From NCBI GenBank assembly GCA_964247055.1, contig OZ176050.1:4030001-4094000 (forward strand): DNA of 64,000 nt, given 5' to 3'. The notes beneath the pieces are model-generated. The model saw nothing but the letters and a program-made list of their open reading frames with translations. It had not been told where the DNA came from and did not search any database. A program made the translations under genes and the position numbers. Below, piece after piece: positions 13,567 through 60,489 of the stretch (positions are counted from its first letter, which is position 1; each line of letters starts with the position of its first letter). The DNA is from Paragordius varius. Its lineage: Eukaryota; Animalia; Nematomorpha.

Positions 13567-16500
13567 ATGCTTCAGCGGGCTAAAAATTTCAATAAAGTTC
13601 TTAAGCCAGCTTTATGCTATATTAGACAGTATATTTGATTTTATAATTTTATAGAGATAAAAATATTGGCTTAGCTGTAAAAAATGTTGAGCCCGAGACA
13701 CTCAGTGGTAATATTTCCCAGGGAAAACCATTTTCTAATCATGAAATTGCCTTCGACAATAAATTTTTTGATATAGATATAAATCTTAAGAGATTTGGCA
13801 GAGTCGACAAGCAAAATGTTTTTCAACTTGTTAAAGAAATGAATAAAAAGGGTATCACCTAACTTTTTAACTTACAGCGGCTATTAATTCATTACATGCT
13901 CTTTTGTTGATTCGTTGTTGTGGAAACGTCATGGTTTCCGAATCATTATCATCAAAAAGAGAATTGATAGCGAATTTATTCAATGTTTGCATGCAAAAAG
14001 GTATACATAATTTTAATACTATTTAGATTTAAAATTTGAAATAACACATTTTAATAGCCTGCTTAAGGTTTTCACAGAAAACAAAGATTTTGGCTTAATT
14101 GATAAACTTTTCCAAGAATCTAGTAAAATAGATTCAGCGACCGCAGATGCATACCTTGTCCAACAATTAAAATTAATGTTTCCGGCTCAATTATTTCCGA
14201 ATAACCTAACCCCAAATAGAATAACCTATCAAAGATTCGTATCTTATGTTTGTGAATCAGGGAACATGGAAAAGGGCGAAGTTTTGTTACAATGCCTAAA
14301 AGATAAGGGAATATCTCTGAACGAAACAATATTTATAAGTTTGATAAATGGTTACGCATCCAAAGGGGATATTGAAAATGTCAAGGGTATTGTTCAGGTT
14401 TTTCCCTTTATCCTAATTGCTTAAAAATTAGCTGTTTTTAAACTTTTATTTTCAAAAAATCTATATAGTAATTCAAATGATAAATTTATCATTATTTTAA
14501 ATGTATCCCTTTCCTTGGTTTTTCTAAAGCGTCTCAATTTTTTAGTGTTGAATAAAAAGGATTAGGTCCGCTGTTATTACCATATATTGGTTTTTCAATA
14601 GTAAATTATACAAGTAGAGAGTTACTTTTATATATAAGAGAAATTTTTATATGATTTATATCAGGGGTGGCCACACTTTTTTTGTCGCGAGCTTTTTTTT
14701 GGCTTTTTTGTTAAAAAAAGAGTTCGCGGTCACCCAGAAATATTTATCAAAAAAACTCAATCAACACTTTAAATGATGTATATACCTGCTTTACAGATTA
14801 GAGTGACTTGTTTAAACCATTTTAAAATTGTAATTTTTTTATCTATCAACCAAATACAAAAATAATTTTAATTAAAAGACAACGGGTTATTAACTACCTT
14901 AATTTTTTAACCAACATAAAACACTTCAAAATATTTATTTATTAAATTTCTATTATATGAAATTTTACAATATAAAAATTTAAACAATGCATTTGAAATT
15001 ACAGGGGAGAATACATTATGATACAAAAAATAAAAGAAATAAAAAATAGCATTCCAATTTAGAACCATAATTTGAACATAAATAAGAGTACATTAAAATT
15101 GTATCAGTTTTAATTCTATCCACATATTTTTTAGTAAATCGGCTTTTTCCTAAGCGAAAATACAACTCGATAAACATCCATATTTAATAAAGAAAAAAAT
15201 ATTTAAAACGCCCGACTGCGAAAAAATTCAGAAAGTTTATCTAAATTAGGTTCAAATGAAGTCAAAGCAATTCTCAAACATGATTCTAAATGTTTATTAG
15301 TTAATTGTGACCTCTGTTTAGTTTTGATAGCATTCATAATTGAAAAAGCCGATTCACATAAATATGTGGATCCAAAAAAAGAATTGAATAATGCAGCGGT
15401 TTTCCAAATATGGGGGTATTTATCTTTATTTATAAATTTATATATATCTGATCCTAATGATTTTAGATGGATATCGCATTTAACATTTATTAATTCCTCT
15501 TCCAACTCTGCTAAATTTGGTACACCAAGAAAGTGGCTGAGTTTTTGAGCAATATATTAAAATTATTATTATTATTAAATGGGCATGATAAAAAAATAGC
15601 GATGTCTTCAAGTTTATTTATAGATGAAAATCGTTTTTCAAAATCATTAATAAGCAGACCAATATCATCTGCATATTTTTCAAAAGAGAGATTCTCTATT
15701 TTTTCAGACACCGCTGCCAGATTAAAAAAATGTTTTAAATCTCGGTTTTTTAATTGTGTTTCTACTACTGTTAGTGTTTCCTTAAAAGATTTTAAAGCAC
15801 CCATCATATCCATTATTGTTTTATCTTTTCCTTGTAATTGGATGTTTAATTTATGCAATTTTTCCGTGATATCGCATAAAAATGCAAGATCAAGCAGCCA
15901 ATCTTGATCTTTCAATTCAGGGTATGAAAATTTAGAATTCTCTAAAAAAATTTCTATTTGTGGTAAAAGTTGCCTAAATCTAATTAAAAATGCGGCACGA
16001 CTCAACCACCTTACATCAGTATGTAATAAAAGTTCTCCATATTCCACGCTGCACTCATTTAACAAAATTCGAAATTGGCGGCGGGACAAGCTTTTTATTC
16101 GAATGGCGTTAACAATTTTAAAACAGGGGTTCATTACATGATGGTATTTTAAAACTTTTGAACATAAAACTTGATTATGGATTATACAATGGTAATCAAT
16201 GAACTTGGGAAATGCACTGTGATTTTTACATAAAGCGATAAAGCCGTTGTTAACGCCAATCATAGCTGGAGCTCCATCAGTAATTATAGATGCGAGTTTT
16301 ACGATGGGAAGTTTCGTATCTGTGATAAATTTATAAAAAGAATCAAAAATATCCTGCCCTCTGGTTCGTTCGTGGAGAGGTATTATAGTTAATAATTCCT
16401 CCTTTGCAGATAAATCACTAAATATCATACGAATAAAAATGCATAATTGGGCGATTCCAACATAATCGGTGGACTCATCGAGTTGCAAGGAAAAAAAATA

Positions 16501-19500
16501 CAGTTATTAATATTTTCATGTAAAATTTCATCAAGATTATTACTAATATCTTCAGCCCTGCGCATAACGGTATTTCTCGATAAGCTTATGCTTTTAATAG
16601 CTGTCATAATATTATTTTTGTTATCAAAATTTTCAAATAAAATATCACAAGCGCTAATAAAGGCTTCTTTAAATATTTCACCATCTTGGAATGGCTTATT
16701 GTTCCGAATGAGTATTTCCGCTACCTTGAATGAAGCAATCGTAGCATTTTTATAGTCTTTGTTGTATTTAAGTATGCTATTTTGTGAGGCGGATAATTGT
16801 TCTTTTAATTCCTTTACTTTAATGTTGCGTTCTTGAGTTTGTAAGGGGTAGTTTTTGGAGTAATGTGGATGCAGAGATCTATAATGTCTTTCAATATTTG
16901 ACTTTTGGCAAAGCAACAGTACTATTGCATATTAGACAGGTGCATGTTTCATTTATCATAATAAAATAGTATTCATGCTCCCAATCTTTCTTGTATCTGT
17001 ACAACTTTTTTTGGCTCATTCTAAAATATAAGTTTTAAAAACCTACTTTTGGTGTATCAAATCAAATCTAACTTCACGATTATGCTTCTGATTTATGAAT
17101 AAACTTTGCTCAAAGTTTTGATATATTCAAGGGAAATGACTGATTTTAAGTTTTAATGCAAATGCTCCAAAACATATGAATTATAATTAATAAAATAATT
17201 TTTTTATACCCTTTTCTTAGACGTTTTTTTTAATTTAAACCTTATTTTTTTGTATTTTAAATTTAAATTCGCTCAGAAGTAGCCAACTATCCGAAAAAAA
17301 TCAATAAAATTTTTTTAAAAAAAATATTTTAAGGCGGTCACTTTTTGAGTTGTCGCGGTCACGAAAGTGACCGCGGTCACCTCGTTGGCCACCCCTGATT
17401 TATATGGTAGTATCTCATTAATGTTTTGCGAAAAAATATAAACATGTAATTAATATTTTAGATTATGAAGAATATGGATATAGATATGTCATCCGCTATA
17501 TATGGCGCCATAGCCAAGGCTCTCATATCCTGTGGTCAGTCTCAACAAATAAATGAGTATTTAAAGGAAGCCCTTGAAAATGGTAGTTGATTATACTCTT
17601 CTATTAATATATCTTAATTTATCTTTTTTTGCTTATATATATAATTTATCTTGTGATCAAAAATTTAGCCATGCAACAACTTTTAAATTAATATATTAGT
17701 AACGTTTTTAAAATTATATATCATCAACAATAAATATCTAAAACCTACTAATAATAAAACGTTTAAATTTTGGCACGTGTATTCAACTTCCTGAATATTG
17801 ATCACAACCATTTTTATGTAAGTTTTGCCCGGTTTTAAGTAATCAATTAATATACTTGAAAATATTTTTTGTAATGTAAATAACTAATATAATTTAATTA
17901 TAATAAATAAAGAGTAAAATTTACTTTTTTAAAAATTGGGAATTATCCAAATTTTTAAAAAGAAAAAACGTTAGCCTAGCCCAAGTTAATTAGTATTAGG
18001 TGCTGTATGTTTTAAAAAATTACGAAATCAGGGGGTATATTTTAAATTTCAAATTTTTTAGGAGTTAATTTCAACAATCGTGATATGTTTGATGTCATTT
18101 CACATGCTATCATTACACAACCCTCATTCGCCCTAAAATCGCAAATTGAGGACAAAAATGTTTCCTTTAGTGCTGATTGGAAAAGTGTTTCAAAAGATCT
18201 TTTGCCTTACATCAAACCACACGGGGATATGATGCAATGCCTTATTAATTCCGTTCATAAACTCTTATCGTACGATAATGTCAATCGGCCAGTTAATTTG
18301 GATTTACAGGCTTATGAAATGTTTAAATACTTTAGTTTTACCATTGGTCAAACGGTTGATCCATCTTTTATATGTAAGTACCATAGTATTAAATCAAATG
18401 TTAAATTTGTTAAAAATATGCTTGTATATTATTTTTTAATATATACATGATTTTTCGATAATGTATTATTCCATTTTTTAATCAAATGACTTATATGATT
18501 TTTTGCATCCGACTCTTTGTGTATTATTTTATATTGTTAGTCACGATTCTTTATGTAATATATGGTTTTCTTATATTTTTGAATTTCGCCTAAAATCTAC
18601 AAATAAAATAAAGATATTTCACTTTTTTGTTTATCATTCACATCAATATATATATATTTATTTATATTATTTACCAATTTTAGAATTGAATTAAATGATT
18701 TAATATGATTAGTACTCATTTGATAAATTAATCACGGTATATTATTTTAGTTAATAATGAACTTAAAAATTCGGGATACTTTATCGTTAAACACATGGCG
18801 GAACAAAAAGAGCCGGCACACTCTTTCAATGATTTAGCCACCATAATTAAAGATTTGCATGGGAATGAACTTAATAATTTTGCATCTCAACGTTTACTTG
18901 AATCATTTTTCAATCAACACTGTTTGCCATCTAACGCTGGAAATAAAAACCTTAAATCATCTACCCCTACTCTTGATGAGTTTATGACAAATTATAAAAA
19001 GTATAGCATTTTATTGTCTTTTTGTCTTTTTTAGTTTATCGTGAAGAATATGGGTAATTTAGAATAAATGAGTTTTAAATAATATTACACACAATGTAGC
19101 AAATTTGTTGGAAATTAAGTTTTTCAACCTTTTATAACGCTTTATTATGTTTAAATTTTATGAACTCTCAATTCAAAATTATCTTTTATTCAATTTATAA
19201 CAAATATGTGACCAAATGATGTCACAAATTATGATATTTTATACTTGGTACGTAAGATAAAAGCATATAGATATAGGTTTTTAATTTTATTAACCTTGAT
19301 ATAAGCTTATATATTTAATGAATTATAAATTATTTTATACAAAAACCAGTTTAAATTTTTTAATGAATTGTTTAAATTTAAATTTTTTGCCTTACTCCAG
19401 ATACTTCCAATTAATGAGGGATACAAAACAAGTGTTTAGACCACATTATTTTTGGCCCTTGTTTGCCAAAATTAGGAATAGCTTAAATTCACGACAATCA

Positions 19501-20445
19501 AGTCCCAATGATACTTTAAAACATTTGTTTTCCACTCTGAAAGCCATGAAAAATGAATATGGTATTGAATGTCTTAACATAAAAATACTTTTTTTTGTTC
19601 AAAATACTTACCTGTATTTAAAAATTAATGGTTTATTTGACCACTTTTCACCCTAAAACAATAAACCAAATTTCATACAGTATTTCATTCAAAATATCTT
19701 TTTTTTTCAAATCTAACTAGACATTTCTATTTAACCATTTGTTCATATAACTTACCATAAAACTTTAATCTTAAAGTTAGAGCCAAATATTAGTTTTATA
19801 TTAAAAAGCTATCAATAAATTAATCTTTAATTCGAACATTTTTCCATTAAAATAATTAAAACCATAAAATTATAATCAATAAACAATTATTATTCTTTTT
19901 TAGACTGTGTCCCTAATGTCACCACATTTCATAGTTATGTATATCCAACACTACTTGATGCACAAAATATTATGATGACTAGCTTTGAAAAAGATTCAAC
20001 AAATTCCAATGCAAATGAATCCGGCTCTATGAATAAATATAAAGGTAACATATCAGTAATAATACATAAAATTGTTTTCATTATTTTCGCATTTTATTTA
20101 AAATAACTCATAATGAGTATTAAAGGTATTAACATATCAGTAAAAATATAAAAAATTGTGTGTTTTTATTTGTCTTCTTTTTGCAATTATTATTATTATT
20201 ATTATTATTATTATAAACTTAAAGGTAAATATATATTTTTTTTCATTTAATTCAAAATAATTTATTATGTATAAATTTAAAGGTGTTAGCATTGAAATGT
20301 CTGAAGAGCTTGCTGAAGCTATGGACGAAGATTATGAAATGTCTGAGACGGCGGAAAAAAATGAAGAAATTTCAAAGAAAACATCAAAGACAACAACCAT
20401 ATTTGATCAAAATAATATAATTATGGTATGATTGATATTATAGAA

Positions 20446-20476
<31 letters not shown>

Positions 20477-23400
20477 CGTTGCAAAATGGGTAATAAAACT
20501 TTTTTTAGTTAACTTATCAAAGATATTTAACTATATTGATAAATTAAAATGGAACCATGAAAAAAAAGTACCTGTCAAGGAATTTCAACAACAGCCATTT
20601 TGATCATAATGATATCATTATGGTATAACATCGAAAATATGGCTATACAATACAAATGGCTTTGCGGGCCACATTTGAAATATATATGAACATTAAGGAT
20701 AATTTATTTCAAATATAAAATTGTAAATTAATTATAGTTTGTTGCCAATTTGATTAGGTTTATTGAAACAAGAAACATCAATTTTACCAAAATTTTGTGA
20801 GCGTATTTTTGGAAATTATGGAATAAATGTTATAAATAACTAATTCATTTATCAAGCAATAATATAATTTTTTATTAATTAATAACCATGTTTGATTGAA
20901 ATGATAATAATTATGGTAGGATATGATTGATAAATAATAATTTTAGCAATATCATTTAAACAAAATAATTAATGCGTTTAATGTAAAATAATTTGTTTGG
21001 TTATATAATGCCACTATTAACCACCGGATTTTTAACGCCATAATTAATTTGAACGATGACCGTGTTTAATACAAATATGGTTCATGATTGGATGGAATTT
21101 CGCATTTTAATATAACCAAAACAATTTAACTTATTGGTTTCTTAAATCCGATTGATTAATAATTAATTTAGTAAAAATAACACGATTTTTGTCTTCTTTT
21201 CTGAAGACTTTCAATCACATTTAAAGCCAATATTGATGTACTATCATCCATTGATTTACCGGCTTAATACTTCATTAACTCATAATTGCCAGTTATAATG
21301 AACGGATTTTTTTATCCGTATTTAATTTTTTGAATATTTACTGTGGTAAATTTTGTTAGCTATCTGGAAAAAGCAATATTTTATGTTGTTTAATAAAATA
21401 CCTAAGACATTTACAGAGAAAAGCTTTATACCAGGCTTTACACATCATGTGTAATTGAAATTTGCACTAATTGTTTTATGTAATTATGGGAAGTTTGCCT
21501 CTATAAAATAGCCTGAGCTAATATATTTATTGGTTTCGGTTGAATATACAATAAAAATTGGTATTACAAAATATAGAAAAAAATTTGATTTTTTTTATAA
21601 AAACTATATGATTTTAATTTATTAATTCTGTATGTTGTTCATATATTATGCCAGATAAGTTAAGATATATAGAATAAATCAAGGCTTTATAATATGGCTT
21701 ACTTAATAAATTTTCATTTTCGTTGTAAGTCCTATCGAAATTTAACATTTTTTACCATTAATATCTTTCATAGAAACCCATACTTTACAATGATTTAAGC
21801 CGAATATGGACAATGCTGAATCAAGGTTTACCATCCAATTTCATGAAAACTATTGAATCACGCGGTATATATTGTCGTTTATGATAGCTTTTGTTATAAG
21901 TCAATTTTTTTAATATTTTAACAATAAAAATACTTAATTTAAATATATTTTAAAGTTTTTGTTTTGTGAAGATATACTTGGAATTGTGTTTTAAATTTGA
22001 TGGTAATTATAATATTTTACCAGTTTTTATTATTAGATTTTATAATTAGATTGTTTTATAATATTTAATCCTATACACTTCAAATGAATTTATTTTTTCG
22101 ACCCTATTATAGCACTTAACTCACTACTTTTGTTTGGGCTAAACACAGCAAATGGTTTTTATACTACGCTACCTAGCTTACATTCCTTTATTCATGGATT
22201 ATCCAAAAAGAATGTTACAGAACCGCAACAAATATCACCTCTAATAGATACATATTTTATATTAAATTCGCTATCTAATCTTTACATATCTACTCTGTAT
22301 TCGACGAGTGACGCCATTTTGTCATCTAAAGGTATTATGTTCAATAACTTAGAAAACTTATATTTGTAATTAAGTTGGGTTTTTCACCCGTTAAAAAAAA
22401 TAACCAGTCTAGCTTGTGTATCTATTTGTGATAATCATAGGCAATTATCATTACCACCTATGTAAAATATATGAAGTTCACTAGTTTAAATTGGTTAAAT
22501 GGTGTCAAATTATGTTTGTATTTCATAATGAAAATGGGATATAATTTGAAGTTTTAGAATTTTTTAATGAATAATGTAGGTTTAGATAAACATATGTTTG
22601 AAAAATTTTAACCTGGTTGCTATTAAGCGCTGTTCATAAAATATGTGAATAATTCATTTTTTTCCATACAGTTAAATCTTTTTGTGCGGAAAATATTTGT
22701 GCTTTAACTCTTTTTCGAGTTTTTAATTTTTCACTTTATTTGTGCTACCCTATTTTATAAAATAAACGGATTTTTAAACATCATTCTGCTTAAAATCTTT
22801 ATTCATCATATTTTGAGTTAATACTCCATTTTTTTGTAAAAATATTAATGCTAAAATTGGTGATCAAAATAAAAGACGTTATATATATAATGCATTTGAT
22901 GAGTTTGCTGGATTAGATAATTTTTATATAATTTCCAACAAACATCATAAAATTATAAAATTAGCGACACGTTTTTTTCACAGTTAAAATAGCCATATTC
23001 ACTAATTTTTTTCTATGTATTATGATTGGGATTAACGGTTTTTTTTCAAATACAAAAAGCCTTATTCCATTTTCTTGTTGGTCAGTTATAGCGGATTTAA
23101 AAATACTTTTGTATTTTTGTGTTCTGCCGGTACCTGTAATATAAGATTTCATTTAGTGAGGAGGAATTTTTAACCTATTTAGTTAAAGATAAATACTCTT
23201 AAACTAATGATAATTATTTTTGGTAGATGTTAAAGCTAACCAATTGGAAAAGCAAATTGTAGATATTTTGGGCTGGATCAACAATTCAATCAACAAGAAT
23301 GAATCTCAAGAAACTCCATCAAGTTTAACTTTTAAAATATTTTTATCTGATCTTTTATTAAGGGAAAATATAATTTACTTTTAATATTTTTTGCTAAATA

Positions 23401-29400: not shown

Positions 29401-32400
29401 AAAATATTTTTAATTATCATTTATAATACTATTATTTTTTTAATAAATAGACGAAAGAATTGGAATTTTTGGTGAACGCATTAAAGGATACGAAAGATGA
29501 TGCTTGTCGAGATGCTATGTATTACAATCTGTTGAAAGTTTACGGTATGATTTTTTAGCCAATTTAATTATATATTTTATACATTTTTGATATAACTACA
29601 TTGTTTGCTAGTGAAAAATATGTTTTAAATTGAATTTTTTGCTTTTATTTTAAAAACTTTATATTGGTTTTATAACTAAGAGGTATGTAATGCGCCATAT
29701 AAAATATATTTAATAAATAGCGGCATTACTAGGTTTGCTAATAGCGTGGTTTTGAAATATGGGGGATAAGCACATTCCTAATTACATGGGAAAAATAAAA
29801 AAATAAGCTAAAATTATATTTGCTTCATATATTTCGATTGCGGCAACAAATAAAACTTTTGCGTTCAAAAAATTTACCTACTTGCTTTCTTATATACCAT
29901 TTACAATTCCAATTTACCCTTGAACAATTAAAATTCACCCTCAAATAAAATATATGTTTTTTAAGATTAATAATTACCTATATTTTTATATATTTTAAAA
30001 AATAAAATGCCATAAAGATATATTTCATATTAATATTATGTTAGTCCGAAAACATATAATTTATTTTTAGGATGAATTTTAACTGTGGTATATATTAAAA
30101 GTCTTGCGTCATTAAGTATGAATTTTTTAATATAACTTATTTTTATGATGCGTAGAACGGAATCAATCCAAGGAAGAGGCTATAAAACTGTGGGAAAAAA
30201 TGGTTGAAAATGAAAACTCCGGATATTTTTATTATTTGCTACCCAAATCAACTGCTGAAACAAAAGGAGGTGATATATCTAATGATCAATTAAACGCAAT
30301 AAATGAAGCTAAAAATGACAGTCAAGATAATAAAACAATCAATTTAAACGACTCTTCAACTACTGTAACGAATGGTATTTATTTTTTTAATTAAACCATA
30401 TTTTTATTAAAGCATTTTTTTCATGATAAATATAATATAATTAACCCACTTTTCGCAATTTATTGGTTTTTACTATCTTTTAGTGTGCACTTTATTCACA
30501 ATAATTTGGTATTTTACCACAATTTTAAGTTTGGTTTTTAACTTATTGTTATTTTTCAAACAAATTCATTTAAATTATTTACTGGTAAAATGTTTTTAAT
30601 TTTTATTTTTTTATTTAGAAAATGTCGTTTATAAAATGGGATCTGACTCCAAAATTGGTTTGCGACAACGTATAATGCAGGACACGGCAAAAATTAGGAA
30701 TTTGCGTTTATTGGCTCGGATCATACGCTCCGATTCTAATGCACATAGTTTGCAACTTTTTAATTTATGGGAGTTTTATTAAGTTGTTTTAACGTATTCT
30801 TAATAAATTATTCTTTAATAATTGGTGACATAGTCATAAATAATTTACGATAAAAATTAGATGTTTCCTAAAGACAACCACCATGTTTATAAATCTAATT
30901 TTTTTAACTAAAAATTAATCTAATAAAATCGTAATTTCATAGGTTATGTAAAAAAATGTAGAAAAATATATATAACACTTGTATTTACTTTTTATTTATT
31001 CCATACATTATCAATTTCGTTTGCATTTATTTTGTTGTTATACTAAGGTGATGAATCAATATGTCATAACATTTCACTACCTTTTAAAATCCCCACGGGT
31101 CCAAAAAATACACCAACTGCAACATTTGCCAATCAAAATGAAATCCGACAGGATACGGAAAATTCTATAATCAATGATCAAGGAAATTCTGAACGTCAAA
31201 ATCAGGTATAATTATAGGTGCATCTCTAAAATGCTTTTAAACCAAACTTATAACGATAAAAAGTAAAAGATTAACTTTTTTTAACTTTGATTTTAATATA
31301 ATTTATATCTTTTTACTAAATTATATAATTAAAGCTGTTAGCTATCGAAATATTATCCAAATTTCAACAAAACAATATGTTTAATTATTAATTATGGTAT
31401 GAGAAATAATAAATTTTATTTTCCATGTTTTGTCTATACAATTTAAATTTTTACATGGAGCGATATTCGTATGTTTACATAAAATAACTTCTTAGGATTT
31501 TGATAAAGAACGCCAAATAATGCAAGAAATTGGAAACGGTGATGTTGCAAAAGCCTATCTTTTAAAACAAAAGTATATTTTTTTGTTTAATTTCTAATTA
31601 TTTCGTTTGAGGTTTTACATGTATGTAAGTTTTTTTAATATACCATCTACATTTCAAATTTATCCTAAAAATAAATTATGTGTTTTCGGGCTTATATATT
31701 CATCATTATTAAAAAATATATTCTTATAACATAGTTTATTATTTTTTTAGTATTATATTAATTTTAAGCGTTTTTTTATTTTTTAATTATATCAAAATAT
31801 GGGTATTTTAAATTTTGAAAATCATAATTTCTTTTAGGGTATATTTCAAGGGTGAATTTCGATTATTCAAGGGTGAATTTGAATTGTTCAAGGGTATATT
31901 TGAATTGTTAAAGGGTGAATTTGAATTGTTTAAGGGTGAATTGGAATTGTTCAAAGGTGTATTTGAATTGTTCAAGGGTGAATTTGAATCGTTCAAGGGT
32001 ATATTTGAATTGTTCGAGGGTGAGTTTAAATTGTTCACGGACGAAGTTGAACTGTAAATGGTATATTCAATTAATATTTTTTAGCTAATTACTAGATGAA
32101 CATTGTTATTTTATATAGATTGTATTGAAAAATGTTTTCTCTTAAATCAATAATTTAGATTATACCAAAACTCAAAGAGTATACTTTCACCCAAAACTTA
32201 TGCCGCATTGATGGAGGGATTGCTTAAGACTGATGGTAAATTAATTCTTTTTGGTGTATTTTGAATTTTACCAAAAATAATTTAAATAATTAGATTGGTA
32301 ATTGCAATTTATATGAAAAGAAAAAACCTCTATTGAACCATAATTTAATATATGTTGTCGTCTAAATTACGTTTTGCATGATTATAATTTTCATCATAAT

Positions 32401-34883
32401 GAGTTGAGTTATATTGTCCTTTTTTTGCTATAATAAGATAATGTTTTGGATGCGTTACGTTTGGGTGAAGAAATGACATCTTATGGTTTGTATGTGCCCT
32501 TACCCCTCATAAAAAGTTTGTTGAGTCGCTTATCAGCGCAAGGGAAAGTCGGGGAAATTATTGAACGCATCCCTGCCCTTATAAGTGTGACTGAGGTGCG
32601 GAATCGTATAAATATCCCCCGTTATATATCCTACGCTTACACAAATAGGTATGAAAATGATGCATATCTAAATTTTATCATACATTTTTGCAGTTATAAA
32701 TTTTTGAGAAGAAGAAACTAACCAGGTTATTTACCGTAAAATCCGTAGTAATGGTGGCCCCCCTACCTAAAAAGAGCGTTTTTAAACCCATCACTTTTAG
32801 ATATTTTTTTAAAGGTTGATTAGGAAAAGGAGTTACTGTTAAAATTTGTGTGTTATATCCCGCAAGTTAACTAGTTTTGCATTCTAGTACGCCAAAAACA
32901 TGAATAATATTTGATTTTATATGAAGTATATGAATAAATTATTATTCAACTATATATTAAGTATTAGAAAATAAATTGTATAAAAATTTATTATATTTGG
33001 GTCACGATACAATTCATAAGCCATGATTTAGGGGAGTTTACAGTAGTACATAAATTATTTTCTTTTATTGGATTTCATTTACTCAAAATAAATAATAGTG
33101 TATGTATTATTATAAATAGCGGACGATTTGGGGATTACATTACAGAATTGGAAAAAAGTTGCCATCAAAATGAATTAAGTAATGTCAAATTACCGTTTGG
33201 AATTGTGTATGGTTTATCCAAAGAACCTGACAAATCAGACAGAAGTATTTATTATTTAGTATTTTTGATAAAATAAAACATTTGGGATTATATATATATA
33301 AGAGATATTTTTAATAGAATTTATGAGTTTGAACCTTAAATGCCTTATTAATTATTATTTATTAAATTAATTTTTATCTTTTTTGTTACTCAGCATTTTT
33401 AAAATGTTTAATCTTCTTTTATGGTTTTGAGTTCTTTAAATTATTTTTAAAATTTTATTCTATCTATCAACCCATTAGTTTTACAGTTATCCAAAGTTTA
33501 CATGGACAAATTCAACATTTTTGCGGGGTATAATACCATGTTTACCTATTACTTTCTTTCGCGACAATTTGAAAAAGCTCATGACTTGTATAACACAATT
33601 TTAAAGCCTAATTTGAAACCGTTGGCTGATGTGAATGTAGTGAATGATAAAACAGAAAACATTTCAAACAATGAACATGATTTAAGTATTAATCAAGATA
33701 AATTCGACCATGAAAAGTTGCGTGAAGCCCATCTCAATCTCATAAATATTTGTAGGGATGCCAAAATCAAAAATGATGTATTTGTACTATTTTTCTTACA
33801 ATTAGAATGTGTGGTTTTAATTTTAAAAATCATTTTTGTTTCTTTTTGAGATTTTAACATGGTTCGAAATAGCAACAATATTTATTTGAATTATGCTCTG
33901 ATTTTTAATAAGGTGTGCCTAATTTTGTATAGAGGCAAAATATTACAGGTAAAAAATAATAAGTACCATTTTTTATACCCTATCGTTTTAAATTGAGAAA
34001 TGGTAAAAATAATGTAAATTGGTTGAGCATCAAATTCTTCTCACATTTTAATGGGTCATATACTATAGTTGTTTCCGCAAAACAATAGAAACGGCTTTTT
34101 TATGTTTTGTGTTTATAATAATTTTTAAATCTCAAATATATTTGCGCAGGATGCAGCCCTTAAATTTTTGATTTATGATATGGAGATTGAAAGAAAGCAA
34201 GACTTGGGCCTTCTTTACAGCTTTTGGATAAGTTTAAAATGTATGTTAAATATTTTGATTTACTATAAAATAAGCTTGGAATCGAAACTTCCGTAATTTA
34301 CCTCCTTTGTGAAAAAAATATATTTAGTTAGCATTTTACATTATTTTCACCATAAATATATTTTTTCACTCTTAAAATTAGGACCAATTTTTTGGAAAAT
34401 AATAGGTATCTAGCTACTCAATTTTAAATCTATATTACATCAAAATAATACTAAATGATTGTAAAAATATAAATTTAAAAGAGAGATTTTAATCATTTGT
34501 AAAAATTAATTATATTTTAGCATCAATGAAAAAAATATATATATATCATTATTAGGTCATAATGGTGCTTACACAGAGGCTTTGAATTTGTTTAATGAAG
34601 GCGTAGAACGTAAAGGCTTAGCTTTGGAGCATTTTAGAGTTTTTGCCCTGAGAGAACTCAAAAATTGTTTGGAATCTAATGGGACATTGGTGCCGTTCGA
34701 TATTTCTCAAGTATTTACTTTTTTTACAAATAAAATGTTAAAAGATTTATCAATATTTATAAGAACTAATTATTATTATTTTGATTATTGTAATTGCAAA
34801 AAATAGTAATATATAAATTTGTTTTATAATATCATATTATATTATTATTATAGCGGAACGTAGAAAATAGAATGGCACAATGA
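13567..34883 (+). CDS. LRPPRC: Leucine-rich PPR-motif-containing protein, mitochondrial (LRPPRC orthologue), ~37 exons, ~1,950 aa
   Basis: The spliced frame keeps phase from ATG 13567 (MLQRAKNFNKVLK.., basic, targeting-peptide-like) to TGA 34883. Segments collinear with remembered human LRPPRC: HALLLIRCCG, THFNSLLKVF, PNRITYQRFVSYVCESG, FRPHYFWPL, PNVTTFHSYVYP, DLLFAFIDLGRMKEAGKVIE, RDAMYYNLLKVY, LRLLARII, LVPFD. Exon starts: 13567, 13655, 13878, 14027, 17462, 18062, 18751, 19400, 19905, 20283, 21774, 22113, 23227, 23546, 23705, 24335, 24758, 25503, 26470, 26672, 27522, 27854, 28207, 28990, 29233, 29451, 30156, 30620, 31049, 31497, 32160, 32438, 33120, 33479, 34151, 34557, 34854 (some +/- a few nt). 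Confidence 0.92.
14662..17397 (-). mobile_element. hAT DNA transposon, Charlie/Buster (SPIN/GTF2IRD2-like), antisense in LRPPRC intron 4
   Basis: TIRs CAGGGGTGGCCA (14662) and TGGCCACCCCTG (ends 17397). Exact TSD ATTTATAT at 14654-14661 and 17398-17405. Subterminal GCGGTCAC motifs, including a perfect CGCGGTCAC-GAAA-GTGACCGCG hairpin at ~17354-17375. Confidence 0.95.
15203..17019 (-). pseudogene. Full-length Charlie/SPIN-type transposase with three frameshifts
   Basis: ATG 17019 MSQKKLYRYKKDWEHEYYF..CLICNSTVAL (BED-like), then LDESTD, RGQDIF, TDGAPAM, HCIIHNQVLC, HTDVRWLSR, LAFLCDIT and FGSTYLCESAFS. Frameshifts at ~16908, ~16495 and ~15550. Confidence 0.9.
25946..26248. mobile_element. Foldback MITE family A, copy 1 (LRPPRC intron)
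   Basis: Termini TACCATTTACA..TGTAAATGGTA flanked by TA. The arms are built of 21-bp TTCAAATTCACCCTTGAACAA units in inverted orientation around an AT-rich spacer. Confidence 0.9.
28645..28926. mobile_element. Foldback MITE family A, copy 2 (ends degraded)
   Basis: 21-bp units on both arms and the shared spacer (TTTTTAAGATTAAAA), but the terminal motifs are lost. Confidence 0.8.
29895..30090. mobile_element. Foldback MITE family A, copy 3 (short right arm)
   Basis: TACCATTTACAA start and ..AACTGTGGTA end, with the same spacer. Confidence 0.85.
31641..32063. mobile_element. Foldback MITE family A, copy 4 (right arm expanded to ~10 units)
   Basis: TACCATCTACA start, a long run of GGGTGAATTTGAATTGTTCAA at ~31840-32050, and a TGTAAATGGTA end. 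Confidence 0.88.
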
Positions 34884-35764
34884 ATATCAGAATGTTTGTA
34901 AATGGCATATATTTTTATATAGAATATTTTTAATCTAGTATTGATTTCAATAAATTGTGATTTTGTTTCCTTATAGTCCTTGATTTTTTAGATTCAAAAT
35001 TGATAAATTTTGGCGAAATAATTTTTGGATATGTAAAGTCGTGATTATAGGCTACAATTAAGTATAAAACTATACGGTCAAACCTCTTTTTATGGTTATC
35101 ACGGGACCAAATTGTTTTTACAACATATTTTAATTTTGGCACTATTATTGGTCGGCATAAAAATGCAAAAAAAAAATTTTTACGGTAAAAAATACGCACA
35201 GAAATTATTAGTTAGGAAAAAATCAGGTAAATGCCCTTTTTGAACGCAACTTTGCATTTTTACCAAATTTTTATATTCATCTACTTTTTGAATTTATCAT
35301 TATCATATAAACCTATTTGGTTAACCCATTTCAGCAGTTATAATCTTTAAAAATGGTTAATCATAATAAGATAATGCAGATAAAAATGGTAATCAGTTTT
35401 ATACTGTTTGTAGAGTTATTAAATGCATAAAAGTTACGACCGTTTATTTCGCACAAAAGGAAACGGTAAAATAAGGGTATAAAACCGCGAAAAAAAGATT
35501 TTAGGGTTTTACAGGATTTTCAGGCACCGTAAAAACAGTGATTATAATAGGAATATAATTTATTCCATAGTTTTTCATTTATTATTGTCAGGTAGAGTTT
35601 ACAGTTCAAAAGCAATATGATTCGCTTATATTTTGCGCTGTTAAAAAATTGTGTAGTTTATTCGCTTTTTTGAGCCAATAGAATAACTTTATCAAAATAT
35701 CAGACAATATTGAATTAAAAACTAGCAATGTATAATTACTCATACTATGTAAAAGAAAAATAAT

Positions 35765-37470
35765 TTATTGCATAGTTTTGCGAATAAAAATGAGTAAATA
35801 AGTTTTGCGACCTTCACGTTCCACTTTTTGGCCTTCTTGCGTTTTTTGGCTCAAACATTTCAACCAGTCATATTCTTCCTAATATTATATAAAGAAAAAA
35901 GTTAATTGTCTTAAATTTGAATATATACCATTTACAATTACATTTCACCCTTAAACAATTCAAATTCACCCTTGAACAATTCAAATTCACCCTCGAACAA
36001 TTCAAATTCACCCTCAAATAAAATACATGTTTTTTAAGATTAAAAATAACTATATTTTATATATTTTTTTTAAAATAAAATTTTTGTTTTAAATTCAAAT
36101 AATATTGAAAAATAATAAACTATACCATAAACATATATATCATATTAATAATGAGTTATATTAGTCTGACATAATTTATTATTTGAATTGTTCAAAGGTG
36201 AATTTGAATTTTTCAAGGGTGAATTTGAATTGTTCAAGGGTGAATTTGAACTGTAAATGGTATATATTTTTATGCTATATTTTTAGTAACACCAATTATA
36301 ACCTTTTAGATAAATAAGGTATTTATATTCGAATACCAAAAAAGCATTAGCAATGTAAAAATTTATAATGGAAGAAAACATGCCCATCCTGTCATATACA
36401 CTGCATTAAATAATCAATCTAAATTCCTAATGTTAGGTTTATATTAGATAATATATTAACACGCATAATCAGATAAGTTAATGATATAACCATTTTAAAT
36501 ATGGCATACATGCTCTATATAAATGATGAATAATCTGGTTTCTTGGCTAGAAAGATTACCATATTATATTCTGACTAAATATTTAACAGTTCTATTATAA
36601 CAAATATTAATTTGCTTATACTTAATTTTTCAGTCATCGTTAAATTTTAAATCGGTTATATAGTGTTCATTGTCTGGATAAATTAAATGCAATATGTTTT
36701 TTGATAAGGAATAATCCAAAACTTTTTTAAAATTTGGAAAAACCCTATAAATATTTACCTTATATCTTTCTGGTTCCAAATACTGTAAAAGCGGGTGCCT
36801 ATTCAAATGTTCGTAATTCCATTTGTGAAGTTGCTCCACATCCGTTGCACTGTATAAACATCCCTGAAATATAGAAATTTATTTCTAACATTTTCCTTCA
36901 TAATAAATGCTATTTCATCTAGAAGTGAATCACTAATAAATCTCCATTTATGTTTGGCTTTTTTAAAATGCGGATCTGGGTACATCAAAAATATTTTTTT
37001 AATCTCTATATTGTAAAAGGTTTAACAAACTTGGGATTTATTAAAAAAGTTTGGCAAGTATTTCATGGCATTTGTGCGAACACATGCTATATTTTTATAC
37101 ATATTTGGATTTTCTTCACGAAGATTTTCGATTGTTTGTATAACAAAATCGGAAACTTTAATGCGTATTTCGATACCAAGCATGCGAATTTCTGGAAAAT
37201 GTGGCGATAGATATGCTACAAAATAAATTATTGGTAGTACTTAGTAGACCTCCGTATCCACAACCAATATCTACAAACTCAATGGGTGTTGTAGTGTCCT
37301 CCGAATCAAATAATGTCTTATAACTTAATTGACTCGGAAATAAAGGACTAAATTAAAAAATATAAAAACTGATATAACGGGCGGAATGATATTGGATTTG
37401 AGTGCGCACGCTGTCTGAAATATCTTTTTTGTGGTTTTTGAGTCATGCTTGATTTTGGTTTTTGAGTCAT
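35765..37470 (-). CDS. METTL1: tRNA (guanine-N7)-methyltransferase catalytic subunit (METTL1/Trm8), 6 exons, 241 aa
   Basis: complement(join(35765..35878,36759..36863,36890..37003,37031..37215,37241..37347,37370..37470)) is 726 nt and in frame. Motifs: PQKRYFRQRAHSNP, EFVDIGCGYGGLL, GIEIRIKV, NIACVRTNAMKYLPNFF, YPDPHFKKAKHKWR, TDVEQLHKW, TQEGQKVEREG. Confidence 0.96.
35926..36262. mobile_element. Foldback MITE family A, copy 5 (METTL1 intron 5)
   Basis: Complete TACCATTTACA..TGTAAATGGTA termini and 21-bp arm units. Confidence 0.9.
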
Positions 37471-39215: not shown

Positions 39216-42200
39216 ATGACTTTGCCACATGGTTATAGTTTCAAATTTTTCGACATAAAACCCGTGTCTGCTCTTAGAATTTTACTTTCATTTAAATTGG
39301 TATCTGCTCTCTGGTCTTCTATATCTGATTGTGATGAAGTTTACAATTATTGGGAACCAGTTTCTAACATTTTTATTATAAGGCGCACATGTTATTGTTT
39401 AAATACGGATTTCAAACATGGGAATATTCACCTATTTATGCTTTAAGATCGTATGCATATCTTTGGATATATACCCTACCCTTATACCTCTATAAAATAT
39501 TTCAACCAAATAAAGTTTTTATTTAATATTATTATTAGGTTCTCTTATTTTACACTTGTCGGTGTTTAATTGGTTGTTTGGGTGCATATTCTGAATATCA
39601 AATCTATAAGTTTTTTAAATTTAATCATTTAAATTTAGAGCTCTAAAATTTATTTCGAATGAATTGTCAACTATATACATTTGGCTTACCATTTTTCCAG
39701 CTGCATCATTTATATCCTCAACTGCGTTTCTCCCATCAACATTTGCTTTGCACTCAATAAATTTTAGTTTTGCTTTTTGGTCTTATGCACATTGCCAAAA
39801 GTCTACCGTAATTATGTTTCTTTAGATTATGTCATGAGTTAAAATAGTTTAATGTTATTTTTCAACGGTTATTAACACTTGGATACAACACATTCATTTT
39901 AGTCCTTCGATTCAAATTGGGGTAGTCAAATACCCCAAGCCTGTTTAAAATTAAATTCTTTAAAAAATATGTAAGGAATCGAAACCATGGCAAAATCTTG
40001 CACTTATATAACATTAATAAACCGAAATATTTAAAAAAATAAATTCAAAAATACTTGATATGTTGAGCTAAAACCGAAAGGTAAAAATATAGTCAACGTG
40101 ACATGCGTGCAATGGTAAAATTGTAAATTAATATAAGTTAAACAGCTTTTTCTATTTCTATCAGTTTTAGATATAATTTAAATAAAAAATAGCTTTAAAT
40201 TTAACGTTAGAATCAAATAAATACGATATTTTGCAAAAATTTTGTAAAATAAAAATTGCGTCGAAGTAGTTTGACATGGAACTTTTTTTTAAACAAATTT
40301 TTATTAAAAAGTTTTAGCTTATTTAGATTATTTTTATTAGGAAAGAAGCATAAATTTAAATTAGGACCGTTTCCTTCAGTAGTTTTTTTAAAATTCCAAC
40401 TTTAATTTGGTCTGGGGTATTTAAATACCCCAAATTGAATCGAAGTGTTAATAAAACATAGCTGACTTAAAATATTGGGTTATTTATGACCTATTGTTGG
40501 AATCAGTAAAAATCCTATTTTTTAGAAATGTTTCACCTATAATATTTAGTAAGAGATACTCAAACACTATATACTTGTTCACAACTTGATTATTTAAATT
40601 AAGCAATTCGCAAAATCCTAAAATTGGTTGTTATAATGATATTTTACACTTATTAAATTATGTAACCGAAAATCGTTGCCATTATTTTAAAATTTTCTAT
40701 ATCATAATATTATTTTAAATTCATGCCAACAAGATGCCATAAATAAATTTTAAAATCTTTGGTAATACTATTAAAAATTTTAAATCTATTTTTAGATGTT
40801 ATTTTAAATATATTTTATCTATTAGAAAATGTACATCATCTCCATATTGTTTTTAGCCAGTGCGGCCCTGATAGGATGGCCATTTGCAGCTATATTAGGG
40901 TAAGTTAAATTTATAATATATATTTATATCAGGGATTAGGTTAGAAACATAGAAATATTTTGATGCAACTTAAACCGATCTTAATTTTATGTAAATGCCC
41001 TATAACCGGTTAATTTTTCTTTTTAAACAACCACTTTTCTCATAATTGACTTTTTAAAAAACCTATTTGGAAGATTATGATGTACTTTTTTGATTTCAAA
41101 ATAAGGTCCCATAATTTTAAAATATCATTAAAATTTTTATCATTTTTAAAATAATGTTATATTATTGGAAAAAAATTATCAATTTAATTTTCAGTTATTT
41201 TGTTTTCTTTGAAAGGCGTCGACATGATGCGGCGGGTGAAGAGGCATTTTTTTCAAAATAGGTAATTATTATAAAGAGACACTCTAAGTTATTGAATTGG
41301 GGGTTTGTTTTGCCCATATAAAAAATTTATTCTAAGATATGAATGAAAAAATACGTTTATAATTAACTTACGTTTTTTATTATTTATTAATACATTTTAG
41401 GTTAGTGTGTAACGATTACATTAATAATTTTTTTGGTATTTTTATTAATCTTTATCTTAAGGGTAAAAAAGTATCTTTTTCATAAAATAAATAGATTACG
41501 TGATTATTTTAAATAATACTGTATAAATTACAAATTTTTTAAAGTCTTAGGTGTGGAATAATAAAACTGATATTATATTTACAAAACCATTTTATTATTT
41601 TGGCGTCATTTGGTTTATTTTTTGTATCAATTAATACTAGTTTACCCATGGTGATAGATCTGATAGTGGTACAAAGAAAATTTGGCGCCTTTTTCAAATC
41701 CATATTCCTAGTCCTTTTAATTATCTTGGTATTTATGTAAATTATATAAAATTTTATGAAATATTTTAAGCGAAACACCGAAATAAAAATGAAAACTGGT
41801 TAAAATTATTAAACCGCTTAAAATTTTTTAGCGAAACTGACTAGAACATTATTAAAATAATTAAAATCCTTTGAAAGTTATGTGTTGTGAATTGTGTTCG
41901 GTAGTTAACTTATTTTAATCGGAATTATTGATGTTAACATTATAATTTAAACTAGTAAATACTAGGCTTATATCAAAATTTTTGGTTATATATCCATGGT
42001 CAAAATTATTTATTGTATTTAAACCATATTGAATGTATATACGCCCTAGAATTTAATCGTAATGCGATAATTTGGAGCATTTACTTTAAACGAGATATTA
42101 CTTTTATTAGAAACATTGTAATATTTTCTCAGTTTAAAAAAACCGTAGAATCGGTTGTAAAATTCTAAAAAAATACAATATCACATATGAGTACTATTAT

Positions 42201-44616: not shown

Positions 44617-44667
<51 letters not shown>

Positions 44668-59434: not shown

Positions 59435-60019
59435 TGCCGATTTCGTACACAGTCTATTTGAATTAACTGCCATAAGGTTTTAAAAGATATATATATATTT
59501 TACGTAGTTACATGAAACGATACCAATACGTTATACTATGAAATTAGGTTCTAAGGATGGTTGCACTCGGGGCGCAATAAAGCCGTGTTTAACACTCGTC
59601 ATCCAAGAAATGGATAGACGTGCTGACAGTTCAAAGTGTTGACATATCGTTAAATAAGATGGTTAACCTTTATTCTCCTCAGATAGGGTTGACTAGAAGA
59701 AGATAACTTTTATGATTTATTAGTAGGAGAAATGAAAAGGAAGCATAATTGTGGTAACTTCATTCAACATGTGGGACGAAATCGTAAAAATTTTAAGCCG
59801 ATATGGGGGTTAAGCTTAAAGGTTCAATATTAAACTAAGGTGTGCTCATTATTATAATTTATAAAATACCTTTTTTATTAAAAAGGCTAGCCATTTAATT
59901 ACATAAGCATTGTAGGAGGTCACATATTAATTACATCCTGGTAGCGGGAAAGTTTTCAGAGTATGTTGTGGATTGCAAAGTGGTACCTAATCCACAGATT
60001 ACTACATAACATTATATTG

Positions 60020-60408: not shown

Positions 60409-60489
60409 TATTATGTGTAAATATATGACAAATATACCAAGAAATATCAAAACCCTAAACTTATAGAAAGTAGTTGAATGCGATTTTCT

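What the first reader, a model, noticed from the sequence alone, without database searches (positions are those of the whole stretch)
13567..39638. Ultra-short (22-29 nt) introns confined to the 5' end of each housekeeping gene; all downstream introns are long
Seen: LRPPRC introns 1-3 are 26, 26 and 26 nt (13629-13654, 13852-13877, 14001-14026). METTL1 introns 1-4 are 22, 25, 27 and 26 nt (37369-37348, 37240-37216, 37030-37004, 36889-36864). ALG9 introns 1-3 are 23, 24 and 29 nt (39360-39382, 39515-39538, 39610-39638). Removing each restores a conserved protein frame. All 10 lie within ~610 nt of the ATG. The 46 later introns in my models are at least 55 nt (LRPPRC minimum 82; ALG9 minimum 55; METTL1 880) and host the TEs. 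The tiny introns are little more than GT + A/T-rich filler + AG, with no recognisable branch box. Established: most animal introns exceed ~45-60 nt and first introns are usually the longest. A 5'-biased class of ~35-nt introns is described in parasitic flatworms, and 20-30-nt introns in ciliates and a few reduced parasites. Inference: two splicing regimes operate within one gene. A promoter-proximal zone permits or enforces minimal introns (cap/CBC- or early-elongation-coupled intron definition, or chromatin that excludes insertions and favours deletions), and a distal zone tolerates long TE-filled introns. The EGF-TM gene (first intron 304 nt) does not follow the rule, so it may be specific to housekeeping promoters.
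Basis: partly seen in the sequence, partly recalled or inferred. Interest (0 to 1): 0.85.

Follow-up and report, generated by a model that had tools for sequence, protein, structure and literature searches.

The report
Tiny introns only at gene starts
Three ordinary genes of this very AT-rich animal genome (a horsehair worm, according to earlier notes of this scan) begin with introns of only 22-29 bases, while every later intron is 55 bases or longer; the tiny ones sit where other animals have normal introns, which bears on how short an animal intron can be, but I found no RNA data to show the cutting.

Summary
All ten segments are GT..AG at the stated coordinates and are 22-29 nt long. Removing them gives open, conserved proteins.

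Support for real introns:
- Pfam and profile coordinates run on without a gap across the junctions.
- The seven tiny introns of METTL1 and ALG9 lie at the same codon and phase as introns of 116-984 nt in the same genes of two other animals. They are therefore ancient introns that shrank.

Later introns, in my own models:
- ALG9: 15 exons, 599 aa, 563 bits against a homologue profile; 11 later introns, shortest 55 nt.
- METTL1: one later intron, 880 nt.
- LRPPRC: approximate model; about 31 later introns, shortest 82 nt.

No intron measures 30-54 nt. Random placement would give this polarity with p about 1e-7.

The tiny introns also differ in make-up from later ones. Their interior is 2% G and 55% T, and T at donor position +3 is more frequent.

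No RNA covered these genes, so the splicing itself is not shown.

The nearest published pattern is the flatworm "microintron": about 37 nt, clustered and 5'-biased. Animal introns under 30 nt are published only for dicyemids and myxobolid myxozoans.

The two-regime reading fits the data but is untested. The EGF-TM gene shows that the zone does not enforce tiny introns.

This scan has already noted the same pattern in other windows of this genome.

The parts
13567..34710 (+). LRPPRC-like gene, about 35 exons. The 5' end is exact; the distal model and the 3' end are approximate.
   Evidence: Exon 4 matches human LRPPRC (8any_A5) residues 184-251, E 6e-21. Exon 3's only PDB match is LRPPRC 120-150, E 0.5. 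PPR Pfam hits. DP model.
13629..13654 (+). LRPPRC intron 1, 26 nt, phase 2
   Evidence: GT..AG; removal restores the frame. No homology test of its position was possible.
13852..13877 (+). LRPPRC intron 2, 26 nt, phase 1
   Evidence: GT..AG; it joins two open frames of 40 or more codons. The downstream exon matches LRPPRC 120-150.
14001..14026 (+). LRPPRC intron 3, 26 nt, phase 1
   Evidence: GT..AG; it joins exon 3 to the PPR-bearing exon 4.
14387..17461 (+). First long LRPPRC intron (about 3.1 kb). It holds long open reading frames on the opposite strand (15203-16916), which I read as a transposon remnant although Pfam gave no hit.
   Evidence: DP model; ORFs; Pfam search without a hit.
26590..26671 (+). 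Shortest later LRPPRC intron in my model, 82 nt
35768..37470 (-). METTL1 (tRNA m7G46 methyltransferase) gene, 6 exons, 240 aa
   Evidence: PF02390 hits on exons 3-5; exon 3 matches human METTL1 residues 64-123, E 1e-15; model.
37348..37369 (-). METTL1 intron 1, 22 nt, phase 2
   Evidence: Same codon and phase as a 984-nt intron in L003. This favours the 22-nt donor over the 31-nt alternative at 37378.
37216..37240 (-). METTL1 intron 2, 25 nt, phase 1
   Evidence: Same position and phase as a 384-nt intron in L003.
37004..37030 (-). METTL1 intron 3, 27 nt, phase 0, with an in-frame TAA
   Evidence: PF02390 positions 71 and 73 abut across it. Same position as a 367-nt intron in L003. Two SNPs and no indel in a second individual.
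36864..36889 (-). METTL1 intron 4, 26 nt, phase 0
   Evidence: PF02390 positions 109 and 111 abut across it. Same position as a 468-nt intron in L003.
35879..36758 (-). METTL1 intron 5, 880 nt. It holds an inverted pair of 21-nt tandem arrays that are very high-copy.
   Evidence: Model; TRF; contig depth about 1e6 at 35,900-36,300.
39216..46600 (+). ALG9 (alpha-1,2-mannosyltransferase) gene, 15 exons, 599 aa
   Evidence: hmmsearch against a profile of 17 homologues: 562.7 bits, profile positions 39-581 in one stretch.
39360..39382 (+). ALG9 intron 1, 23 nt, phase 0
   Evidence: PF03901 positions 31 and 32 abut across it. Same position and phase as a 520-nt intron in L001. One SNP and no indel in a second individual.
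39515..39538 (+). ALG9 intron 2, 24 nt, phase 0, with an in-frame TAA
   Evidence: Same position and phase as a 279-nt intron in L001. No gap in the profile alignment.
39610..39638 (+). ALG9 intron 3, 29 nt, phase 2
   Evidence: Same position and phase as a 116-nt intron in L001. No gap in the profile alignment.
39808..40825 (+). First long ALG9 intron, 1018 nt. It starts 592 nt after the ATG and holds a copy of the high-copy repeat also present at 37.7-38.5 kb.
   Evidence: Model; depth and joints between the two copies.
44374..44428 (+). Shortest later ALG9 intron, 55 nt. It splits the conserved motif QPHK|EERF.
49742..52963 (-). EGF-TM gene, which lacks tiny 5' introns. Its introns are about 304 (52560-52863), 109, 74, 109, 106 and 210 nt. 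The third has weaker 23-nt (51641-51663) and 35-nt alternatives.
   Evidence: Sequence; open frames; splice-site scores; DP models.

Best explanation
Shown or strongly supported: the ten segments are genuine U2-type GT-AG introns. They are old introns, present at the same codon and phase in other animals' METTL1 and ALG9, and they have shrunk to 22-29 nt. In all three genes they fill every intron position within about 0.6 kb of the start codon. The first long intron begins 590-820 nt after the ATG, and every later intron is 55 nt or longer.

Inferred: intron size here is limited in a position-dependent way. Later introns obey the usual animal minimum of about 50-60 nt, and transposons are free to inflate them. 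Cap-proximal introns escape that minimum and have drifted, or been selected, down to a G-poor, U-rich core of about 25 nt.

The mechanism I think most likely: the whole 5' block up to the first long intron is transcribed and handled as one cap-defined unit. The small introns inside it are then removed by intron definition early in elongation, with help from the cap-binding complex or the early form of the polymerase. That help is not available further downstream, where exons set between long introns are recognised by exon definition.

The zone permits tiny introns but does not enforce them.
For: Termini, sizes and open frames.

Contiguous Pfam coordinates across the junctions.

Full-length, gapless ALG9 alignment.

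Intron position and phase identical to ordinary introns elsewhere: L001 for ALG9 (520, 279, 116 nt) and L003 for METTL1 (984, 384, 367, 468 nt).

DNA contigs of two individuals keep the tiny introns, with substitutions but no indels over the three that the listed contigs of the second individual cover. The 880-nt intron shows 14 gapped positions in 404 nt.

All ten would give a premature stop if retained, and both introns whose length is a multiple of three carry an in-frame TAA.

Interior composition is A .34, T .55, G .02, C .09, against G .11 in long introns.

Polarity: 1/364 x 1/5 x 1/5984, about 9e-8 under random placement. No intron measures 30-54 nt, while short transposon-free later introns stay at 55-157 nt.

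Donor +3 is T in 6/10 tiny introns against 7/43 later ones.

Flatworm microintrons show the same clustering and 5' bias, and their authors also proposed intron definition at 5' ends (PMC6530080).
Against: - No RNA evidence: the RNA-labelled runs do not cover these genes, and no transcript-derived protein was found.
- Only three genes were examined.
- The later LRPPRC introns come from a codon-statistics model that also inserted false exons inside transposons.
- The three LRPPRC tiny introns have no position-conservation test.
- The donor difference is driven by METTL1 and ALG9 (the LRPPRC tiny introns are all GTAT), and the later LRPPRC donors were chosen with a matrix trained on these same genes.
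- The EGF-TM gene has a 304-nt intron inside the 'zone'.
- A weak 23-nt candidate about 1.3 kb into that gene cannot be excluded.
- Nothing here tests cap or elongation coupling.
Confidence: 0.55

Rival explanations
1. Mutation balance without any special splicing. A strong deletion bias shrinks every intron towards the smallest size that can be spliced. Transposon insertions and their debris re-inflate introns. Insertions close to the promoter are removed by selection, for example because silencing would spread onto the promoter, so only 5' introns reach the floor.
For: Long introns hold very high-copy repeats and foldback arrays (35.9-36.3 kb, 39.7-40.5 kb), and one holds long opposite-strand open reading frames that I read as a transposon remnant (15.2-16.9 kb; no Pfam hit). 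The published Gordionus horsehair-worm assembly, whose GC content matches this window, is 64% repeats. The tiny introns are old introns that shrank, not new ones.
Against: Eight or more later introns are short and show no transposon (55, 74, 82, 106, 109, 124, 151, 157 nt) yet none has fallen below 55, and nothing lies at 30-54 nt. A high-copy repeat sits about 230-250 nt upstream of the METTL1 ATG, so promoter-proximal DNA does accept insertions. The tiny introns also differ in composition and in donor position +3.
Confidence: 0.25
2. A gene-class effect rather than a positional one. Broadly and highly expressed genes are selected for very short introns near the start, for example to keep intron-mediated enhancement at minimal cost. 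The apparent distance rule is a by-product of looking at three housekeeping genes.
For: The one tissue-type gene in the window (EGF-TM) has a 304-nt first intron and no tiny 5' introns. In plants and nematodes, intron-mediated enhancement is known to need introns close to the transcription start (own knowledge, not checked here).
Against: It does not explain why later introns of the same housekeeping genes never fall below 55 nt. The sample is one exception against three. Expression level could not be measured.
Confidence: 0.12
3. Not introns. The segments would be assembly errors, small insertions in decaying pseudogenes, or DNA that is cut out of somatic genomes.
For: Splicing was not seen in RNA.
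Against: Independent DNA contigs from two individuals carry the segments unchanged in length. No DNA joint skips them in the joints table, which shows only its best-supported rows. All ten have GT..AG ends. Seven of the seven tested sit exactly on ancient intron positions with the same phase. The spliced proteins are intact and conserved along their whole length.
Confidence: 0.03

Closest known systems
Flatworm microintrons (Opisthorchis felineus and other trematodes, Schistosoma, tapeworms, Macrostomum; Ershov et al. 2019, PMC6530080)
   Same: A separate class of very short introns sits beside kb-long ones in the same genes. The short ones lie next to each other and prefer the 5' end. They lose the polypyrimidine tract and other internal signals. 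The authors proposed intron definition at 5' ends.
   Different: The peak there is about 37 nt (with a second at about 90 nt), against 22-29 nt here. There the 5' preference is a statistical bias; here it is all-or-none in the three genes. Flatworm microintrons are reported to have splice sites closer to the consensus, whereas the donors here are further from GTAAGT (GTTT or GTAT). The phylum is different: Spiralia there, an ecdysozoan here if the scan's horsehair-worm label is right.
Ultra-short introns of Dicyema japonicum and myxobolid Myxozoa (Hadjez et al. 2026, PMC13644364)
   Same: Animal GT-AG introns under 30 nt, at conserved intron positions, with reduced splice-site motifs ('GTa' at the 5' end).
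   Different: In those animals the tiny size is the genome-wide median in compact, transposon-poor genomes. Here the tiny introns are a minority (10 of about 53 in three genes) and share genes with introns of up to 3 kb in a repeat-rich genome. That paper's main text does not mention Nematomorpha and reports no 5' polarity.
Ciliate introns (Paramecium, about 25 nt)
   Same: Same length. Retention gives a premature stop, and introns whose length is a multiple of three carry in-frame stops (own knowledge of the Paramecium literature; abstracts).
   Different: In ciliates all introns are tiny and show no positional classes. They are unicellular and have no transposon-filled introns in the expressed genome.
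The usual animal rule that first introns are the longest
   Same: Intron length depends on rank along the gene.
   Different: The direction is inverted here: the first three or four introns are the shortest, by 2 to 100 fold.

Membership tests
U2-type spliceosomal GT-AG intron | GT at the 5' end and AG at the 3' end | tested here: met
   10 of 10.
U2-type spliceosomal GT-AG intron | Removal restores a continuous, conserved reading frame | tested here: met
   Pfam coordinates abut across the junctions. The ALG9 model aligns without a gap. METTL1 is collinear with L003. For LRPPRC only frame restoration and weak collinearity are available.
U2-type spliceosomal GT-AG intron | Orthologous intron at the same position and phase in other species | tested here: met
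   7 of 7 tested: ALG9 introns 1-3 against L001 and METTL1 introns 1-4 against L003. LRPPRC was not testable.
U2-type spliceosomal GT-AG intron | Absent from mature RNA | tested here: inconclusive
   The two RNA-labelled runs laid do not cover these genes, and the best holders are DNA.
U2-type spliceosomal GT-AG intron | Branch site upstream of the 3' splice site | tested here: inconclusive
   TAAY or YTNAY is present in 8-9 of 10 but is no more frequent than in shuffles (P 0.09-0.33).
Flatworm-type microintron architecture | Two separate length classes in one genome | tested here: met
   22-29 nt against 55 nt or more, with nothing in between, in four genes.
Flatworm-type microintron architecture | Microintrons lie next to each other | tested here: met
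   Runs of 3, 4 and 3 consecutive introns.
Flatworm-type microintron architecture | Preference for the 5' end of genes | tested here: met
   All ten precede every long intron; chance about 9e-8.
Flatworm-type microintron architecture | Length peak near 32-37 nt; taxon Platyhelminthes | tested here: not met
   The mean here is 25.4 nt and the maximum 29 nt. The organism is not a flatworm according to the scan's notes. I checked only that the GC content (26.8%) matches the Gordionus assembly (26.93%).
Genome-wide ultra-short introns (Dicyema or myxobolid type) | Introns under 30 nt | tested here: met
Genome-wide ultra-short introns (Dicyema or myxobolid type) | The tiny size is the typical (median) intron size of a compact genome | tested here: not met
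   About 43 of 53 introns in the three genes are 55-3075 nt, and transposons fill the long ones.
U12-type (minor) intron | Highly conserved 5' splice site (A/G)TATCCTT and branch site TCCTTAAC | tested here: not met
   None of the ten shows either motif (sequences).

The most novel reading that the evidence does not exclude
An animal in which the minimum size of a spliceable intron depends on distance from the cap. Introns of 22-29 nt, about half the normal animal minimum, would be removed only within the first 0.6-0.8 kb of the transcript by a distinct, cap- or early-elongation-coupled mode of intron definition. The same spliceosome would need 55 nt or more further downstream. This would be a third, independent animal origin of introns under 30 nt. 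It would be the only one in which both size classes sit in one gene, so the rule could be tested directly with minigenes.
Probability: 0.3. Interest if true: 0.85.

Novelty: new variant of a known kind. Interest (0 to 1): 0.62.

Why it matters
**How short an animal intron can be.** A paper of September 2026 states that animal introns under 30 nt are known only from myxobolid myxozoans and a dicyemid (PMC13644364). This genome would add a third lineage. It is also unlike the other two: the genome is large and full of transposons, and tiny and kb-long introns share one gene.

**A natural experiment.** The sharp switch about 0.6 kb after the ATG lets one ask what sets the minimum intron length. 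It also allows a test of whether early, cap-coupled splicing differs from later splicing.

**Annotation.** This point is an inference and was not tested. Gene finders and BUSCO-type tools that assume introns of about 40 nt or more would break the 5' ends of such genes. The published Gordionus assembly, whose GC content matches this window, scores only 71.6% BUSCO completeness, and its paper never mentions introns. Some reported 'losses' of universal genes in horsehair worms may therefore need re-checking with a minimum intron of about 15-20 nt.

Tried and rejected
**RNA evidence**
- The look-up of sequencing runs gave no RNA holder.
- Read laying on 35,700-41,699 with X1, X4, X6 and X8 showed that X1 and X4 are DNA. 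X6 and X8 gave only short, diverged pieces with loose ends that do not belong to these genes.

**Transcript-derived proteins and close relatives**
- The search for homologous proteins found nothing with LRPPRC exon 4 or ALG9 exon 2.
- METTL1 exon 3 gave only relatives of 73% identity or less.
- The look-up of encoding contigs found nothing for the open reading frame 50571-51389 or for P0004. I therefore could not name the organism or test a second horsehair worm.

**Methods that were too weak**
- Pfam on single transmembrane exons of ALG9 gave nothing. I replaced it with a home-built homologue profile.
- Blind scans for 'GT..AG of 18-40 nt joining two open frames' are no better than decoy dinucleotides. 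They are useful only as a list to inspect.
- The first DP with codon scores alone mis-modelled ALG9. With splice-site matrices it recovers METTL1 exactly but still adds false exons inside transposons.

**Features tested**
- Branch-site motif: not above chance.
- 'GTAA never in tiny introns': 0/10 against 7/12, P 0.005, in ALG9 plus METTL1. It fades to P 0.10 once the later LRPPRC donors are added. I kept only the weaker +3 T statement.
- CpG island or methylation footprint at the 5' ends: none.
- A distal 23-nt intron in the EGF-TM gene: rejected as the best model, because both its sites score below every confirmed site and a 74-nt alternative uses the best acceptor. It is not excluded.

**Papers:** the Berriman 2009 paper could not be read.

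Full report
**What is in the sequence**

The window is 26.8% G+C. At the stated coordinates there are ten GT..AG segments:
- LRPPRC: 26, 26 and 26 nt.
- METTL1, minus strand: 22, 25, 27 and 26 nt.
- ALG9: 23, 24 and 29 nt.

Splicing them out gives open frames from ATG 13567, 37470 (minus strand) and 39216.

**Gene identity and the junctions**

Single exons given to Pfam by reference hit adjoining profile positions:
- METTL1 exons 3, 4 and 5 match PF02390 positions 19-71, 73-109 and 111-143.
- ALG9 exons 1 and 2 match PF03901 positions 3-31 and 32-72.

METTL1 exon 3 matches human METTL1 residues 64-123 (E 1e-15). LRPPRC exon 4 matches human LRPPRC residues 184-251 (E 6e-21). The only PDB match of LRPPRC exon 3 is LRPPRC residues 120-150, and it is weak (E 0.5).

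**Full gene models**

- ALG9: a search with exon 2 returned 150 representatives. I built a profile from the 17 near-full-length ones and placed the exons by profile coordinate, GT/AG ends and frame. The model has 15 exons and 599 aa, with introns of 23, 24, 29, 1018, 741, 1475, 151, 743, 55, 208, 157, 375, 313 and 273 nt. It aligns with profile positions 39-581 in one stretch (562.7 bits) and has no gap at the three tiny junctions. One 15-residue gap falls in a variable loop at the 743-nt intron. That gap could hide a micro-exon.
- METTL1: introns of 22, 25, 27, 26 and 880 nt.
- LRPPRC: no homologues could be fetched. I used a dynamic-programming model with codon log-odds and splice matrices trained on the confirmed introns. 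It allowed introns down to 18 nt and had no length preference. It recovers METTL1 exactly. It recovers ALG9 except for extra exons inside transposon-bearing introns. For LRPPRC it gives 26, 26, 26 and then about 31 introns of 82-3075 nt.

Targeted scans found no credible tiny intron in the later parts of LRPPRC or ALG9.

**Are the tiny segments real introns?**

RNA could not settle it. No RNA run holds the region. When contigs were laid on 35,700-41,699, the two best holders proved to be DNA and the two RNA-labelled runs did not cover the genes.

The strongest evidence is comparative:
- L001, a contig from the public run SRR6063170, carries the ALG9 gene of another animal. It has introns of 520, 279 and 116 nt after WEP| (phase 0), after NK| (phase 0) and inside the K codon after FY/IY (phase 2). 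These are exactly the positions and phases of the 23-, 24- and 29-nt introns here.
- L003, a scaffold from ENA ERZ23487155, carries a whole METTL1 gene. It has introns of 984, 384, 367 and 468 nt at the positions and phases (2, 1, 0, 0) of the 22-, 25-, 27- and 26-nt introns here. This also decides between the 22-nt and the 31-nt version of METTL1 intron 1.

Further support:
- DNA contigs of two individuals keep the segments. The listed contigs of the second, diverged individual cover three of the tiny introns; they show substitutions inside two of them (37017, 37019, 39379) and no indel in any. The 880-nt intron shows 14 gapped positions in 404 nt.
- Retention of any of the ten would give a premature stop. 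Both introns whose length is a multiple of three carry an in-frame TAA.
- The interiors are 55% T, 34% A, 9% C and 2% G. Long introns have 11% G.
- A branch-like motif is not more frequent than in shuffles.

**Is the polarity real?**

The last tiny intron ends 460, 606 and 422 nt after the ATG. The first long intron starts 820, 712 and 592 nt after it. Placing 3 of 14, 4 of 5 and 3 of 34 introns first by chance has probability 1/364 x 1/5 x 1/5984, about 9e-8. No intron measures 30-54 nt.

The EGF-TM gene lies on the minus strand, with its ATG at 52963. It has a 304-nt intron 100 nt after the ATG and later introns of about 109, 74, 109, 106 and 210 nt. Its third intron could instead be 23 or 35 nt. 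Those sites score below every confirmed site, and the 74-nt version uses the best acceptor in the region.

**How it may work**

Two readings compete.

- Mutation balance: deletion bias against transposon inflation, with insertions purged near promoters. It explains why long introns hold the repeats. It does not explain why short, transposon-free later introns stop at 55-157 nt. It also does not explain why a very high-copy repeat sits about 230-250 nt upstream of the METTL1 ATG.
- Position-dependent limit: this fits the empty 30-54 nt gap. It also fits the distinct make-up of the tiny introns and their donors, where +3 is T in 6/10 against 7/43. That contrast is weak and partly circular.

I therefore favour a cap-proximal mode of intron definition, and I stress that it is an inference. 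CpG observed/expected is 0.97 and flat, so a methylation-defined zone is unlikely.

**Comparison with what is known**

Flatworm microintrons peak at 37 nt, are clustered and 5'-biased, and prompted the proposal of intron definition at 5' ends (PMC6530080). They are the closest architecture.

Introns under 30 nt are published for Dicyema and myxobolid myxozoans only, and there as a genome-wide median (PMC13644364).

No searchable paper links horsehair worms with intron length. The Gordionus genome paper gives a GC content of 26.93%, 64% repeats and 71.6% BUSCO completeness, and never mentions introns.

I did not verify the organism beyond the GC match. The horsehair-worm label comes from earlier notes of this scan.

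**Earlier notes of this scan**

The same pattern has already been recorded in other windows of this genome, mostly also without RNA. One note reports RNA support for tiny introns in another gene, which I could not check.

What this report adds:
- exact position and phase matches for seven introns;
- a full ALG9 model;
- the chance estimate;
- the G-poor composition of the tiny introns;
- the flat CpG profile and the promoter-proximal repeat, which argue against an insertion-free zone;
- the EGF-TM gene as a worked exception.

Noticed in passing
window 35934-36018 and 36181-36254; similar arrays near 25996-26130, 29799-29945, 31812-32085, 59945-60163, 60245-60693: Tandem arrays of a 21-nt unit (TTCACCCTCAAACAATTCAAA) occur as inverted pairs about 160 nt apart inside long introns. 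Contig depth there is about 1e6 times the single-copy level. This looks like a very abundant foldback or MITE-like element.
   Followed up: partly
window 37700-38500 and 39700-40500: A second very high-copy repeat lies in the METTL1-ALG9 intergenic region, starting about 230-250 nt from the METTL1 ATG. A related copy lies in ALG9 intron 4. Many DNA contigs join the two copies.
   Followed up: partly
window 37432-37480 (minus strand): A perfect 24-nt tandem duplication covers the METTL1 start. The ATG and the first eight codons (MTQKPKSS) occur twice in frame.
   Followed up: no
window 37470-39216: METTL1 and ALG9 are a divergent, head-to-head gene pair with 1.75 kb between their start codons. 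Both start with runs of tiny introns.
   Followed up: no
window 719-3577 (+): A LINE-like element with an endonuclease domain (PF14529, PF03372), reverse-transcriptase-like frames and a PHD finger (PF00628).
   Followed up: partly
window 15203-16916 (-): Long open frames (325, 163 and 100 aa) on the strand opposite to LRPPRC, inside its first long intron. They have no Pfam hit. I take them for an unclassified transposon.
   Followed up: partly
window 1-64000: CpG observed/expected is 0.97 over the window, so there is no sign of germline cytosine methylation. The CAGCTG word that other windows of this genome report as hugely enriched occurs only three times here.
   Followed up: partly
P0001 (ALG9 homologue of another organism, 549 aa): A predicted protein with five or six tandem copies of the ALG9 exon-2 peptide, separated by what look like translated intron ends. 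It recalls the 'introns built from exon-edge repeats' noted elsewhere in this scan, but it comes from a different organism (55% identity).
   Followed up: no
window 51624-51697 (-): Between the EGF exon and the transmembrane exon of the EGF-TM gene, three frame-compatible introns are possible: 74, 35 or 23 nt. Only RNA can decide. The 23-nt one would be a tiny intron far from the gene's start.
   Followed up: yes
window 13629-13656 and 37004-37030: Two tiny introns end in AGAG or TAGAG, with tandem acceptors 2 nt apart. Only one of each pair keeps the frame, so acceptor choice must be precise to the base in a 26-27-nt intron.
   Followed up: no
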